A stretch of DNA of 64,000 nt from positions 6,696,001 to 6,760,000 of the forward strand of contig NC_135250.1 in assembly GCF_964204865.1 (NCBI RefSeq), in the 5' to 3' direction. Under the pieces are notes generated by a model. That model was not told where the DNA came from and searched no databases. It saw nothing but the letters and a program-made list of their open reading frames with translations. This document shows, one piece after another, positions 1 through 7,621 of this stretch (within the stretch, counting starts at the first letter, position 1; the number at the start of each line of letters is the position of its first letter). The stretch comes from Styela clava (lineage: Eukaryota). Both the position numbers and the translations under genes were made by a program.

Positions 1-167
1 AAATATTCCATGCTGAGAACCGATTGCATTTTTTTATTTCGCAATCTGTGCCTGAATATCAATAATTGTTTTTTTCATTGTTTGCTCACAATTAATTTCA
101 AACAAATTTATTTATCGCCATATTTAAACTGCATGATTGCTCTTTTCTTGTCATTGTTGTAAACTGC

Positions 168-209
168 TTGTCTGAGGAAGTCTGATTTTGGTCAGACGAA
201 ACGTTACAG
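168..209 (+). ncRNA. Minimal type-I hammerhead ribozyme motif, copy 1
   Basis: TTGT-CTGAGGA(172-178)-A-stem II GTCTGA/TTTTGG/TCAGAC(180-197)-GAAA(198-201)-CGTT-ACAG. Stem III is reduced to palindromic AACGTT, and TGT/ACA forms a short stem I. Confidence 0.7.
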
Positions 210-755
210 AAATATATTTGTGTTAGTGTGCAGCAGGACTCTTGAATTGCATATTATAGTATTTTATTCCTGCTACAGCATCCTTGCATTACATGCATAC
301 GGATCCACTAGCGCAAAGGCATAGAGAAAGGATTGGGAGTTAGTCTCGCGCAACCTCTACTGATCGTTATATTAGCCTTTTTCGCGTGACTTCTGTATCC
401 GAATGGATCCTGCCAAACTCCGGACTCGACAACTACCACAAGAAAAGAATTTAGAAGCAATACTAAAAAGAATTCAACGCCTTTAAAAGAACCACATTAT
501 AAGGACCCTGGCTATCAAGATCTGAGCCTAGAACACATTGATAAATGTTCTAGTGAAACTTATTGTGAAATCAAGCACGCCGCGGAACAAATATTCCATG
601 CTGAGAACCGATTGCATTTTTTTATTTCGCAATCTGTGTCTGAATATCAATAATTGTTTTTTTCATTGTTTGCTCACAATTAATTTCAAACAAATTTATT
701 TATCGCCATATTTAAACTGCATGATTGCTCTTTTCTTGTCATTGTTGTAAACTGC

Positions 756-797
756 TTGTCTGAGGAAGTCTGATTTTGGTCAGACGAAACGTTACAG
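756..797 (+). ncRNA. Minimal type-I hammerhead ribozyme motif, copy 2
   Basis: Identical to copy 1, CTGAGGA at 760-766, 588 nt downstream. Confidence 0.7.
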
Positions 798-943
798 AAA
801 TATATTTGTGTTAGTGTGCAGCAGGACTCTTGAATTGAATGAATATATACTGGAATTTATGATACATAAATAATTAACAGCTACGAAAATTTAAGTATGT
901 AATATATTCGTTTATAACATCTCAACAATATTATTATTATTAC

Positions 944-2774
944 CTATAATTATATTTAACGTCGTCCACACGCATGGCTCGTTTAATTTTTGCCATTCTC
1001 CGCACTGGAAATGAAGGAGGTTCACACGCGCGATCGTGTTTCTTCAGCATTTTCATTTCCGTGAAACCATCTGTACCGAGTACAGTATCATGTGTGCTCC
1101 CTAGAATCATTCCGCTTGTTTTTTTGAGATAAGAGAAAAAATTGCATTCCGCGTCTTGTTTCTGATAAAAATTTGAGCAGAAAAAATACAATCAGATTGT
1201 TCTGTTCAAAGTTTCATTCACAAATGAGCATGGTTATCGAATATCCCACTACTCTCTCAAGAGCGTTGCTGAAAACGCATTTGGTATTGGAATTTTGTGG
1301 AAATTACTAAATTAGGAAATAAAATGTCGCCTTATCGAGCGATGAATGATAACACAATTTACCTGAAATCCGACATCAAATTTCAAATAGCACAGTTCCT
1401 GCATTTTATCAACCGTAACCATAGAAACTAAGCGTGAAAGAAAGTTGAGATCAACCCTTCTTGAAGCTGGCACTTCACTTTCGTGAAACGTATCTCTGTC
1501 CATTCTATGGGGTAAAAACTGAGGAACGACAACTGTTCTATCAAATAAAAGGTATGAAATTATGACGTTAAGTGCCTAGCAAACAGTTGCCCAAAGTCGT
1601 GAGATTAGATGCCCTAATGTACGTACAATCTTTGGTCATCATTAAATTTAGGTAATTTCACCAAACGGACATGTCTCAAGATGAGTCATTATCGCAACTA
1701 ACGTGAGTCAGTTCAAGTCTAAAATCAGGTGGTTGAGTCAACCATAAGTGAAATTTCTCAATTACAGTATACGTCTTCATGCGTGCGCTATACTCGACCG
1801 GTATCAGTAAGGTATTTGCAAAATATTGTGTCTGCAACCGAATAATTAATTCTTAAAAAAAATGTGAAACTGCTGATGAATATTTTTAACATACCTATTC
1901 GTTTCAATTCCAATGAATATTGCTTCCTGAAATGAAATTAGTTCATTGCTCGGCCCATTTTGATTTGCTGGATATATTATTCGGGCTGGATTCAATTGAA
2001 TTAGCGGTTTATCAGATGGTTTCCAGTCCAGTTCATTTGCCCATTTTGGACACAATTCGTTTGTATCTTTAACCTGAAAAATTTATGTTTGGCATGGCCT
2101 TGGGTAGTTCTATATTACTAAAGGATTTTCAGCGTAATTATAATAGCTTACACAAACGTTTCTATTCACTTTGCAAGCTCGTAAATTACCTTCTCTCCTT
2201 CAGACTGGAACTTGTTCGATTTACGAGATTCACAGTTCCATTGGCGCATTGCCAGCAAACGTGATATTTCGTCCGCGTCTTTCTGTTTACGAATAGGAAC
2301 TGTGACCAAAAATAAGACAGTGTATTGACTTTTTTGTTTATTTAACTTAACACGCCTCGTCATGTTTGGTGCACTTATTAGATGGAGTTTATTCGACATG
2401 CTAACCACTGGATTGCCATACTATTAGTGTGACATAGCTTATTATAGTAAGGTGGCATGGATACACACCAAGAAGACAAAGCGAAAAATGTTTTTCTACT
2501 TGTTGATATAAATTATTGATTAGTGTTATTGGCATATAAAAATAACTTGAAATCGTATTTCCACTTTTTAATAGAAAACTGTAATTTATTTCAATTTCAA
2601 AAATGCTATGGTTTCACCAAATCACTCTACTAACTGAAAGGACAATATTTTAACTATATAAAATTCCATTTTTTGCTTTTGATTACATTCATCTATATAC
2701 AAGATTCTAAAATAAGTATGGCAAATCTCTCACTTGTTTCTTCTGAATTTCTTCTAATATTTTCACGGAGTATC
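944..2774 (-). CDS. Partial uncharacterised multi-exon protein-coding gene
   Basis: Phase-compatible GT-AG exons at about 2774-2734, 2300-2190, 2073-1895, 1504-1363 and 1004-944 read ...ILRENIRRNSEET/IPIRKQKDADEISRLL...EGEK/VKDTNELCPKWANELDW...GIETN/RMDRDTF...ELCYLKFDVGFQ/CGEWQKLNEPCVWTTLNIII. The 5' and 3' ends were not located and the family was not recognised. Confidence 0.6.
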
Positions 2775-5462: not shown

Positions 5463-7621
5463 ATGGAGTTTTTAATTGGAATCAGAGGTCCAGATTTTGT
5501 ATTGCTTGCTGCTGATACTTCTGCAGCAAGGAGTATTGTGGTATTTCAACAAGGTAGGCGATCTGTGAGTTTATTTTTCTCGTATACGGTATAGGGGTGT
5601 AAAGCCCTTCCGCTGTTTCGCGTGGGGTCACTTGGTTTTCTGTTTACACTGCCACAGACAGTAAGTACCTTACCGACCTAGTTACCGTACGGTACCGTAG
5701 TACTTGCACCAGTTATTGCATATTTTTATGGTTTTGATCTGATACCGGTACCGGTATTGAAATCAATCAGTTATAACATAATGAACTACTCCATTTTTAT
5801 CAATACAGCATTACTGCATTAAGCGTGACAGTTCTATATCTGCGTATTCAATGCGATTTCTTATCGAATGTTATCCAAACTTGAGTTGATACAAAATGAT
5901 TTTTTCACAAGCTTTAGTATTAAAGTACCGGTAATAATTTTAGTCAATACCGGTATCAGTTATAATCTCTGAAGTATACCGCTACCGGTACCTATTTGAA
6001 GAATTTCGTTTACATTATCAAAGTATTAAAAGTGATCATGAATCATGGCTCAAAAATAGTGCACCATTTGCTAAAAACCATCGAAAAGATTTCGAGAATA
6101 TCCACATTGTGACTTATTCATTTTACAGATGAAGATAAAATGGTCAAATTGGGGTCGAACACATTAATGGCTGTTTCTGGTGAACCTGGGGACAGGGATC
6201 AGTTCTCAGAATATATTCAGAAAAATTTAACTCTTTATAAATTGAGAAATGGATATGAATTGTCTACACGAGCCGCAGCTAATTTTACTCGAAGGAATCT
6301 TGCGGAATATCTGAGAAGCAGGGTAATTTTTTATCGTTTTCAATCCATCGATCCATATAGAGCAGTTATATTTGTAAGTTCTCGGAAAAACCATTGGGCA
6401 TCTTTACTGTGTAGCCTATGGGTGATTTACTAAAGACTAAATATGTAAGCAAAAAGTTTAATGATAAGTGTCTGTTATGGTGAACATATAATAGAACAAG
6501 TTTGTTTCCATTGCAAAAAAATTTTTTTTTCCGAGTACAAAATTGTCAAAAAGTCTTTTTTTTTATTGCTGTTTTTGAAGTACCTCAATGTTTTTTGGGG
6601 AAGTCAAACAGCATCAATCAAAATTTCAGTGCAAAAATCCATGTGAGGCCGTGTCAGTCAATAGTACTGCTAAACTTCATTAAGGTTTTACCATAATCTT
6701 ATTCCAATTTTCCTTAGTTCTATTACAAGTTCGGGGACTAGCCAAGTGACTCCCGTAGTATTTGTACCTGAAATTATGGCCTAACCCCAACCTGGTACAC
6801 ATACTACTTTCCGGTGTCCGCCATATTGTTTCGCATACTACAGAAGTACCGAGTTATGAATATTAAAATGTGATAGATAGATTTCCTATTTGATTAGTTT
6901 CACTTTTTCATAATGTTTTTATTTTCAACAGACTCCATATATGGCAAATCTGTTGATAGGTGGTGTTGATCCAGACATGGGACCGGCACTGTATTTCATG
7001 GATTACTTGGCATCGTCAATGGAGGTACCCTTTGCTGCTCATGGTTACGGTTCATATTTTTGTCTTTCTATATTGGACAGACTGTATCGTCCAGATTTAT
7101 CCAAACTTGAGGCAGTTGAAATCTTGGATAAATGCATGCAAGAGGTTTGTATTGTTTTTTATATCTTTATTTAAAATTTTTGTTCATTGAGTTTTGATTC
7201 GAATCCTTTCCTCATTTATCTGAGCATTATGAACACATTAGTCATAAGACTACTAATCATCCTGAATGAGAGTCACAACACATGTCCAAGTCTCCGGTGG
7301 ATCATAATTAGTATAATGTTGTAAATCATGACATCAGAAGAAAGTTCCTAGCTAAGACTGTGAATTCCACATATTGACCAATCACCAGGCAAAACTGACC
7401 AATTTGACTGGTAGACCACTGAGTCAAAGGCATAGATAGCATAAAGCAACATTTAAAATTATTTATATTTCTCATTTTTATAGCTGCGTAAAAGATTTAT
7501 CATTCAAATACCTGCTGTCAGAGTTCGTATTGTTGATAAAGATGGCATACATTCTCTCTCTGAAACCCTAGCAGAAAAAGATAGACCTTCAACAAAAGTT
7601 CCTGCTTTTGAGTTTGTATGA
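5463..7621 (+). CDS. PSMB2: Proteasome subunit beta type-2 (20S beta4), 211 aa, 4 coding exons
   Basis: Exons 5463-5553, 6129-6322, 6932-7144 and 7484-7621, all GT-AG and in phase. Protein [18 protein letters not shown]...[26 protein letters not shown]...[27 protein letters not shown]...MDYLAS...[15 protein letters not shown]...[10 protein letters not shown]...VDKDGI matches the PSMB2 family. Confidence 0.96.
6700..6842. mobile_element. MITE fragment in PSMB2 intron 2 (CCTAACC-containing family)
   Basis: CTCCCGTAGTATTTGTACCTGAAATTATGGCCTAACCCCAACCTGGTACACATAC is an inverted match to 44945-45000. Confidence 0.6.

What the first reader, a model, noticed from the sequence alone, without database searches (positions are those of the whole stretch)
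1..837. Tandem hammerhead-ribozyme repeat that could release a 588-nt (circularisable) RNA monomer
Seen: two identical motifs CTGAGGA-A-[GTCTGA..TCAGAC]-GAAA-CGTT-ACA exactly 588 nt apart in a direct repeat. Established: Penelope-like elements and non-LTR retrozymes carry minimal type-I hammerheads whose stem III is a short palindrome and which cleave as dimers. Inference: a + strand transcript across both copies could pair the AACGTT palindromes, cleave twice and release a 588-nt unit with little coding capacity, making this a candidate undescribed retrozyme/PLE family. The motif is antisense to the adjacent minus-strand gene, so it should not cut that pre-mRNA.
Basis: partly seen in the sequence, partly recalled or inferred. 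Interest (0 to 1): 0.78.

Follow-up and report, generated by a model that had tools for sequence, protein, structure and literature searches.

The report
Gutted Penelope retroelement array with hammerheads
The repeat is the right-hand half of one inverted insertion of a protein-less 588-bp derivative of a Penelope-like retrotransposon, and each unit carries that family's usual minimal hammerhead ribozyme, so it is a clear new example of a known kind of element.

Summary
Window 1-252 and 589-840 are a 99% direct repeat. The 34-nt motif occurs at 172-205 and 760-793, with 0.03 matches expected by chance.

The motif has the features published for the minimal hammerhead of animal Penelope-like elements (PLEs): no helix III, an ACGU palindrome, a bulged A before a 7-bp helix II, and a 4-bp helix I. 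It has 1013 genomic matches against 66 for the reversed control. In 6 of 9 places on contig C1 it lies 450-776 nt downstream of a GIY-YIG reading frame on the same strand. In L050 that frame follows a reverse-transcriptase frame.

Unit positions 45-372 are homologous to those PLE tails. The unit has no gene.

The window holds only one arm. Just upstream lies an inverted arm of 2.35 units, and the whole 2.56-kb structure has an 11-bp target duplication and sits in an intron.

Contigs of RNA runs from three studies carry the tandem form. Cleavage and circles are untested, and Rfam models do not match.

Verdict: a non-autonomous PLE, or non-LTR retrozyme; a new member of a known kind. This scan had already reached the same verdict for this family on other DNA (s1-814887).

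The parts
1..588 (+). One complete 588-bp unit of the non-autonomous element (unit positions u1-u588). The + arm starts 332 nt before the window at u242.
   Evidence: arm u242 to u258, 2.01 units, 98.4% to a unit concatemer
589..837 (+). Partial second unit (u1 to about u249) ending at the short terminus T1 of the insertion
   Evidence: Other copies and loose ends of DNA contigs also stop at u250-258.
168..209 (+). Minimal hammerhead 1. Helix I strands 168-171 and 206-209, core CUGAGGA 172-178, bulged A 179, helix II 180-186 with 191-197 (loop 187-190), GAA 198-200, ACGU 201-204, U17 at 205. Predicted cut between 205 and 206.
   Evidence: features as in PMC4209133
756..797 (+). Minimal hammerhead 2, identical to the first. 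Predicted cut between 793 and 794, 588 nt after the first cut.
45..372 (+). Part of the unit homologous (74-98%) to the tail/pseudo-LTR of PLE copies elsewhere in the genome. Repeated at 633-837.
   Evidence: In L050 this region follows RT and GIY-YIG frames. In full-length copies on C6 it flanks a 960-aa open frame.
373..632 (+). Spacer of the unit (u373-588 plus u1-44), with no detectable similarity to the PLE-bearing loci and no gene
   Evidence: best hits 39 nt, E 0.027; longest open frame in a unit dimer 87 aa
837..847 (.). Right copy of the 11-bp target-site duplication GAATGAATATA. The left copy is at G000:C1:6694280-6694290, outside the window.
944..1161 (-). Exon of the spliced host gene. 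Its 5' splice site AG|GTAATA at 944/943 opens the 2.74-kb intron that holds the whole array.
   Evidence: (spliced RNA contig of 1179 nt, with 287 nt lying left of 942), (in-phase acceptor at L031 8200/8199)

Best explanation
Window 1-837 is the right arm of a single insertion of a 588-bp, protein-less derivative of a Penelope-like retrotransposon (PLE). Such elements are called non-autonomous PLEs or non-LTR retrozymes. Each unit keeps the stretch of the PLE tail that carries the family's minimal type-I hammerhead and about 165 nt after it. By analogy with the one PLE studied in vitro, this is where the PLE protein binds and starts reverse transcription. Shown here: the anatomy of the motif; its link to RT plus GIY-YIG frames; homology of the unit to PLE tails; the PLE-style insertion architecture (partial tandems, an inverted 5'-truncated arm, an extension at one end only, target duplication in AT-rich DNA); and presence of the tandem form in contigs of RNA runs. 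Inferred: more-than-unit transcripts are made. In this locus the - arm could also be made as part of the host intron. The RT/endonuclease of autonomous copies acts in trans, cuts both DNA strands and primes on each at one of two internal start sites (T1 near u250, T2 near u370), giving two arms that meet head to head. Two hammerheads on one RNA pair through ACGU to build two composite active sites and cut after GUU, probably slowly and with protein help, which would free a 588-nt RNA. Ligation of that RNA into a circle, and rolling-circle copying of it, would explain the multi-unit arms but is not shown.
For: The motif is specific: 2 matches in the window against 0.03 expected, and 1013 in the genome against 66 for the reversed control. 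It meets the features that Cervera and de la Pena 2014 list for animal PLE minimal hammerheads beyond the core boxes (text read). These are a nucleotide between A9 and G10.1, a G10.1-C11.1 pair, a long helix II (7 bp here), a short helix I (4 bp), and a palindromic 15.2-16.2 with no loop 3. On 14 distinct copies, helix II cells are 98% paired and the ACGU cells 100%. Subfamilies differ at N7 (G/A/U), in loop 2, and at pairs 10.4-11.4 and 10.7-11.7 in pair-keeping ways. Among the 100 rows listed, my hand count gives 16 U.G, 1 C-G and 0 C.A at pair 10.4-11.4. Link to PLEs: 6 of 9 GIY-YIG places on C1 have the motif 450-776 nt downstream on the same strand. L050 has an RVT_1 frame with YIDD (26.2 bits), then a GIY-YIG frame (22.7 bits), then the motif. 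Open frames of 960-977 aa exist, and on C6 two copies lie 3713 bp apart with the motif region about 70 nt before the frame. PLE families only 57-69% identical in this protein segment carry near-identical motifs. Unit positions u45-372 are 74-98% identical to these tails. Architecture: 8 of 8 head-to-head pairs examined have one arm ending at u214-267 (five at u253-258, one at u252, one at u267; L049's alignment stops early at u214) and the other at u355-379. The 6 pairs checked all have 9-15-bp target duplications. This matches the published PLE picture of an inverted 5'-truncated copy and a tail at one end only (PMC8557442, passages; PMC11167929, main text). RNA: X1 and X5 are shown to be RNA by spliced contigs. 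Their contigs cover u156 through u588 to u171 and run through position 549. They carry T at 500 and no deletion at 378, like the tandem-type loci. The roughly 65 passenger copies that dominate the DNA run X11 carry A at 500 and a 549-to-304 joint at depth 799.
Against: No Rfam hammerhead model matches, at gathering or at E up to 10. The own-genome search with RF00163 returned nothing, but only 74 of 48684 candidates were scored. Covariation is not significant on the 14 distinct copies: one pair has a change on both sides, and 141 of 500 shuffles do as well. Helix I is weak: 82% of cells pair, and subfamily B breaks two of its four pairs. The double-hammerhead secondary structure scores -17.9 kcal/mol against -17.2 for the two helix II hairpins alone and -13.4 for each monomer's own best fold, which buries part of the core. 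The 588-nt monomer does not fold better than shuffles (z -1.48, 7 of 100), whereas published retrozyme circles are called highly self-paired. Most inner ends of arms (11 of 17) lie at u142-205, upstream of or inside the hammerhead. Only u202 and u205 are near the predicted cut, so most templates were not cut at their first hammerhead. The RNA contigs carry letters (258 G, 492 T, 591 T, 638 T) that differ from this window's copy, so this locus itself is not shown to be expressed. Contigs cannot show strand, ends or circles. The one-end extension is about 115-120 nt here, not the published 30-40 bp.
Confidence: 0.82

Rival explanations
1. The element is the same, but the hammerhead-like motif does not work as a ribozyme in the cell. 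It is kept because it is part of the RNA structure that the PLE protein recognises near its start sites of reverse transcription. No 588-nt monomer or circle is made, and the templates are linear more-than-unit transcripts.
For: In the only PLE studied in vitro, hammerhead mutants did not change insertion. No RNA-seq reads began or ended at the cut site, and cleavage needed the protein (PMC11167929 main text). Minimal PLE hammerheads cut poorly in vitro (PMC4209133). Here the active fold is energetically marginal. 11 of 17 inner arm ends keep an uncut hammerhead region. The monomer is not unusually structured.
Against: All invariant core positions are kept in PLE lineages whose proteins are only 57-69% identical. 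Changes between subfamilies fall on N7, loop 2 and pair-keeping positions. One insertion starts at u205 and one at u202, next to the predicted cut. Arms of more than two units in a single insertion are most simply made from a circular or long multimeric template.
Confidence: 0.13
2. This is an ordinary local tandem duplication, a satellite or an assembly artefact that happens to contain a hammerhead look-alike.
For: Only 1.4 units are visible inside the window. Rfam finds no hammerhead.
Against: The same unit recurs at independent loci on C1, C8, C14 and C16, with their own target duplications and the same two termini. The motif is tied to RT plus GIY-YIG frames. There are 1013 against 66 control matches. 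RNA and DNA runs from four studies hold the sequence.
Confidence: 0.02

Closest known systems
Minimal hammerheads in the pseudo-LTRs of metazoan Penelope-like elements (Cervera and de la Pena 2014, PMC4209133)
   Same: It has the same core boxes and no helix III or loop 3. It has a palindromic 15.2-16.2, an unpaired nucleotide between A9 and G10.1, a G10.1-C11.1 pair, a long helix II and a short helix I. There are about a thousand mostly solo copies per genome grouped in consensus families. Pairs of motifs lie close together on opposite strands, and only a few sit next to full RT/GIY-YIG frames.
   Different: Here the motif sits in a 588-bp unit without any gene. The motif family is rather uniform in sequence (mean column identity 90% on 14 distinct copies), not highly variable as reported for most animals.
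Non-LTR retrozymes of animals (Cervera and de la Pena 2020, PMC7229834; Li, Clavereau and Pollet 2026, bioRxiv 10.64898/2026.07.22.740005)
   Same: The units are tandem, non-coding and AT-rich, and each has a type-I hammerhead. They co-occur with autonomous PLEs and are homologous to the PLE pseudo-LTR. Unit length is within the 51-972 bp reported in 2026. The element is present in RNA runs.
   Different: The 2020 retrozymes carry canonical hammerheads with loop-loop contacts, give 170-400-nt circles and form long arrays. This unit has the minimal PLE-type motif, is 588 nt, reaches only about 2.3 units per arm and is always found with an inverted partner arm. No circle is shown, and the monomer is not markedly self-paired. 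The 2026 preprint reports depletion from introns, whereas this copy is intronic.
Canonical PLE insertion architecture (Craig et al. 2021, PMC8557442; Frangieh et al. 2024, PMC11167929)
   Same: It shows partial tandems, an adjacent inverted 5'-truncated copy, an extension at one end only, AT-rich targets, two internal start sites of reverse transcription, and cutting and extension of both DNA strands.
   Different: The one-end extension is about 115-120 nt instead of 30-40 bp. The element is an internally deleted, non-autonomous form.

Membership tests
Hammerhead ribozyme, minimal type-I variant of PLEs | Core boxes C3-U4-G5-A6-N7-G8-A9, G12-A13-A14 and U16.1-H17 in type-I order | tested here: met
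   CUGAGGA at 172-178, GAA at 198-200, GUU at 203-205. Only N7 varies among subfamilies, but the search pattern fixed the other core letters.
Hammerhead ribozyme, minimal type-I variant of PLEs | Helix II hairpin starting with G10.1-C11.1, preceded by one unpaired nucleotide after A9 | tested here: met
   7 bp plus a 4-nt loop, 98% of cells paired on 14 distinct copies, and the bulged A is invariant.
Hammerhead ribozyme, minimal type-I variant of PLEs | No helix III or loop 3; palindromic 15.1-16.1 stretch able to pair between two copies | tested here: met
   ACGU at 201-204; 100% of cells pair as a palindrome.
Hammerhead ribozyme, minimal type-I variant of PLEs | Helix I of 4-5 bp flanking the motif | tested here: inconclusive
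   UUGU with ACAG gives 3 Watson-Crick pairs plus 1 wobble. 82% of cells pair, and subfamily B breaks two pairs. RNAfold prefers a competing pairing.
Hammerhead ribozyme, minimal type-I variant of PLEs | Compensatory changes in the helices | tested here: inconclusive
   One pair has a change on both sides, and 141 of 500 shuffles do as well. My hand count gives 16 U.G, 1 C-G and 0 C.A at pair 10.4-11.4 among 100 rows, but copies are not independent events.
Hammerhead ribozyme, minimal type-I variant of PLEs | Match to a curated hammerhead covariance model (Rfam) | tested here: not met
   No hit even at E up to 10 in the 1-1500 scan.
Hammerhead ribozyme, minimal type-I variant of PLEs | Self-cleavage after H17 | not testable with these tools
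   Contigs cannot show RNA ends (table 6 empty).
Penelope-like element (autonomous) | Single ORF with RT and C-terminal GIY-YIG endonuclease | tested here: not met
   There is no ORF of 80 aa or more in 1-939. The longest open frame in a unit dimer is 87 aa. Related copies elsewhere do have it, so the window's element is non-autonomous.
Penelope-like element (autonomous) | Partial tandem (pseudo-LTR), adjacent inverted 5'-truncated copy, extension at one end, target duplication | tested here: met
   The extension is about 115-120 nt, not 30-40 bp.
Non-LTR retrozyme | Head-to-tail non-coding repeats, each with a type-I hammerhead | tested here: met
   2 motifs in the + arm and 3 in the - arm, spaced 588, 588 and 574 nt.
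Non-LTR retrozyme | Sequence homology to the pseudo-LTR of co-resident PLEs | tested here: met
   u45-372 is 74-98% identical to PLE tails.
Non-LTR retrozyme | Canonical hammerhead with helix I/II loop contacts and efficient cleavage | tested here: not met
   The motif is the minimal PLE type, with no loop 1.
Non-LTR retrozyme | Expressed as linear and circular RNA of unit length | tested here: inconclusive
   The tandem-type unit is present in contigs of RNA runs from three studies. Strand, ends and circle cannot be seen, and this locus's own variant letters are not seen.

The most novel reading that the evidence does not exclude
The 588-nt unit could be an active retrozyme that uses the minimal, dimer-only PLE hammerhead. 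It would be cut out of more-than-unit transcripts, including the sense arm carried in a host intron, then ligated into a 588-nt circle and copied by rolling-circle reverse transcription on both cut DNA strands by the resident PLE protein. That would explain why single insertions have two inverted arms of more than two units, each starting at a different internal site. It would be the first retrozyme shown to run on a minimal hammerhead, and a natural record of two-strand priming by a PLE.
Probability: 0.25. Interest if true: 0.5.

Novelty: new member of a known kind. Interest (0 to 1): 0.3.

Why it matters
It gives a cleanly delimited, young example that links two published classes: PLE minimal hammerheads and non-LTR retrozymes. 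The unit is non-coding, homologous to the PLE tail, and keeps the minimal, dimer-only ribozyme. The set of single-event insertions found here could serve as natural test material for the in vitro model in which a PLE protein cuts and extends both DNA strands from two internal start sites. These insertions have an inverted pair of arms, a target duplication, and in all eight pairs examined one short-type and one long terminus (the short-type end of L049 is an early alignment stop). It does not open a new category.

Tried and rejected
Rfam at gathering score over the whole window and at E up to 10 over 1-1500 gave no hammerhead. The four weak hits (mir-4922, ceN33, ceN102, AgvB) are all far below their gathering scores, and I treat them as chance.

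RF00163 against the own genome returned nothing, but only 74 of 48684 candidates were scored, so this says little.

The idea that the common 94-95% copies are independent insertions was rejected. They are one old copy (u512 to u549, then 16 nt, then u304-373) carried inside a repeat of at least 8-10 kb that was later amplified. Their boundary at u512 is not an element end of general meaning.

A long ORF next to twelve other motif sites was sought. Only L050 had PLE frames. The other long ORFs (L042, L045, L046, L047) look like unrelated host genes and were not pursued.

The homologous-protein search with the 238-aa GIY-YIG segment found only 5 short proteins, none with an RT domain on record and none named. 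It did not help to place the PLE clade.

Folding of the 588-nt monomer and the energy of the double hammerhead gave no support for a specially stable RNA.

Covariation on 14 distinct copies was not significant.

A paper search for hammerheads or PLEs in tunicates (listing only) showed nothing specific. That listing is no proof that none is in print. I could not see the supplementary alignments of PMC4209133 and PMC7229834, which may hold related motifs.

The spliced model of the host gene was not joined or searched as a whole.

Full report
**Observation.**

The window opens with a direct repeat: 1-252 and 589-840, 99% identical, spacing 588. The 34-nt motif (CTGAGGA, one A, a hairpin, then GAAACGTT) occurs at 172-205 and 760-793 and nowhere else in the 64 kb. 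Chance expectation is 0.03 matches. Homology between the copies stops at about 837.

**What the window does not show.**

The window is G000:C1:6696001-6760000 in a 377-Mb genome of 380 contigs. I joined the 10 kb before the window (L031) to its start.

- The + arm begins 332 nt before the window at unit position u242 and runs 2.01 units to about u250-258.
- Two bases to its left, an inverted arm runs on the - strand from u155 through 2.35 units to u373.
- One search lists three motifs on the - strand there (C1:6694453, 6695041, 6695615) and the two in the window.
- The whole 2.56-kb structure is flanked by an 11-bp direct duplication, GAATGAATATA.

It is therefore one insertion event.

**The motif is the Penelope-type minimal hammerhead.**

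Read as a type-I hammerhead, the parts are as follows:

- C3-A9 is CUGAGGA.
- One unpaired A follows.
- Helix II is GUCUGAU/GUCAGAC, with loop UUUG.
- G12-A14 is GAA.
- A15.1-C15.2-G16.2-U16.1 is ACGU, with no loop.
- H17 is U.
- Helix I is UUGU with ACAG.

[quoted passage not shown] They list four features that were not in their search descriptor:

- consensus families with compensatory changes
- a G10.1-C11.1 pair
- a palindromic 15.2-16.2

They also note pairs of motifs 100-700 bp apart on opposite strands, and that only a few motifs lie in full PLEs. All of this is seen here.

The pattern has 1013 matches in the genome against 66 for the reversed control. On 14 distinct copies from my loci:

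- helix II is paired in 98% of cells
- the ACGU palindrome is paired in 100%
- helix I is paired in only 82%

Formal covariation is weak. One pair has a change on both sides, and 141 of 500 shuffles do as well.

Among the 100 rows printed, I counted by hand 16 with U.G, 1 with C-G and none with C.A at pair 10.4-11.4. That fits selection for pairing in the lineages that spread. Copies are not independent events, however.

No Rfam hammerhead model matches.

**Link to Penelope-like elements.**

- In L050, an RT frame (RVT_1, 26.2 bits, just under Pfam's 29.6-bit cut-off, with YIDD) is followed on the same strand by a frame with a cysteine knuckle and a GIY-YIG domain (22.7 bits), and then by the motif.
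- A search of the genome with that GIY-YIG segment gave 152 matches, with open frames up to 960-977 aa.
- On contig C1, 6 of 9 distinct GIY-YIG places have the motif 450-776 nt downstream on the same strand.
- On C6, two copies lie 3713 bp apart. The motif region lies about 70 nt before the start of the 960-aa open frame. This resembles the anole PLE, in which the ORF starts inside the hammerhead (PMC11167929).
- PLE lineages whose protein segment is only 57-69% identical to that of L050 carry motifs that differ from it at only three positions each in the rows (N7, 11.4 and one loop letter).

**The 588-bp unit is a gutted PLE.**

Unit positions u45-372 align at 74-98% with the tails of these PLE copies. 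The rest (u373-588 plus u1-44) matches nothing in those loci, and the longest open frame in a unit dimer is 87 aa.

The unit recurs in four other inverted insertions examined (L003, L005, L008, L013); one search places its copies on C1, C8, C14 and C16. In 8 of 8 head-to-head pairs examined, the two arms end differently:

- One arm ends at u214-267. Five arms end at u253-258, one at u252 and one at u267. L049's alignment stops early at u214.
- The other arm ends at u355-379.

The 6 pairs I checked all have 9-15-bp target duplications in AT-rich DNA.

This is the published PLE architecture: partial tandems, an adjacent inverted 5'-truncated copy, and an extension present at one end only (PMC8557442, passages). 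It fits the in vitro finding that a PLE protein cuts and extends both strands and starts reverse transcription at two internal sites (PMC11167929, main text). The extension here is about 115-120 nt, not 30-40 bp.

Inner ends of arms cluster at u142-205 (11 of 17). Two lie at u202 and u205, next to the predicted cut.

About 65 further copies per genome are passengers in a larger repeat.

**Host context.**

- A 1179-nt contig of run X1 is spliced with CT..AC introns at 1162-1362, 1538-1894 and 2072-2187. This shows a - strand gene, and shows that X1 is RNA. X5 shares one of the joints.
- The exon at 944-1161 ends in AG|GTAATA.
- The next in-phase acceptor and an 88-codon exon lie at L031 8199-7938, left of the array.
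- The contig's unplaced 287 nt fit that exon.

The array therefore fills a 2.74-kb intron that would be about 180 nt without it. The window's arm is antisense to the gene, but the other arm is sense.

I searched the exons apart and left the joined model out.

**RNA.**

The look-up of sequencing runs listed no holder on record as RNA. The spliced contigs settle that for X1 and X5, but not for X8.

In X1, X5 and X8 (three studies), contigs cover u156 through u588 to u171. Depths are about 32, 109 and 1728. The neighbouring gene has depths of 42, 3-5 and 0.

These contigs run through position 549. They have T at 500 and no deletion at 378. In the DNA run X11, the dominant form has A at 500, the deletion at 378, and a 549-to-304 joint at depth 799. 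That is the passenger form.

The RNA signal therefore comes from tandem-type copies and is unlikely to be DNA carry-over. However, it carries 258 G, 492 T, 591 T and 638 T, unlike this window's copy. This locus itself is not shown to be expressed. Contigs show no strand, ends or circles.

**Mechanism and its weak points.**

Two motifs on one RNA can form a double hammerhead. In that fold, ACGU pairs with ACGU, and each 5' strand of helix I pairs with the other copy's 3' strand. Its nearest-neighbour energy is -17.9 kcal/mol. That compares with -17.2 for the two hairpins alone and -13.4 for each monomer's own best fold, which hides part of the core.

The 588-nt monomer is not unusually stable (z -1.48).

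This agrees with the low in vitro activity of minimal PLE hammerheads and with protein-assisted cleavage. I therefore expect slow, assisted cutting. A circle is possible but unproven.

**Comparison and verdict.**

Non-LTR retrozymes are tandem non-coding repeats with type-I hammerheads that co-occur with PLEs (PMC7229834; abstract and passages). A 2026 preprint derives them from PLE pseudo-LTRs and gives consensus lengths of 51-972 bp (10.64898/2026.07.22.740005; abstract and Results part 1).

This element fits that class. It differs in carrying the minimal rather than the canonical hammerhead, and in forming short arrays.

It is a new member of a known kind. Earlier notes of this scan reached the same verdict for 587-bp and 360-bp arrays elsewhere in this genome.

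Noticed in passing
L034 1-10000 (G000:C13:5343501-5353500); also L035-L038 and L032: There is a repeat of at least 8-10 kb, 96-98% identical between dispersed places. On C10 it forms a head-to-tail array with a period of about 8.3 kb. It carries one old copy of the 588-bp unit (u512 to u549, 16 nt, u304-373). L032 has no ORF of 120 aa or more. Its nature is unknown.
   Followed up: partly
window 847-994: In DNA run X11, two contigs cover this stretch. One is identical to the window (depth 6.6). The other has 7 differences in 148 nt (depth 10.1), and its first 57 letters do not lie on the end of the array. This may be a second haplotype without the insertion, but the letters were not shown.
   Followed up: no
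window 584: Contigs of all three RNA-type runs read T where the window, the DNA run X11 and every tandem-type locus I held read G. It could be a strain difference, an unsampled source locus or editing; not resolved.
   Followed up: partly
window 942-2303 (- strand) and L031 5995-8199: This is the spliced host gene, with introns of 201, 357 and 116 nt plus the 2.74-kb intron that holds the array. Four exons searched apart gave no Pfam family.
   Followed up: partly
G000:C14:12466737-12530505: An inverted insertion of the same unit, with one arm starting at u205 next to the predicted hammerhead cut, is repeated four times at a spacing of about 21 kb. It therefore sits in a large segmental tandem, which also holds several decayed GIY-YIG fragments.
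   Followed up: no
window 6140-6433 (+): A 97-aa ORF looks by eye like part of a proteasome beta subunit. It was not tested with any tool.
   Followed up: no
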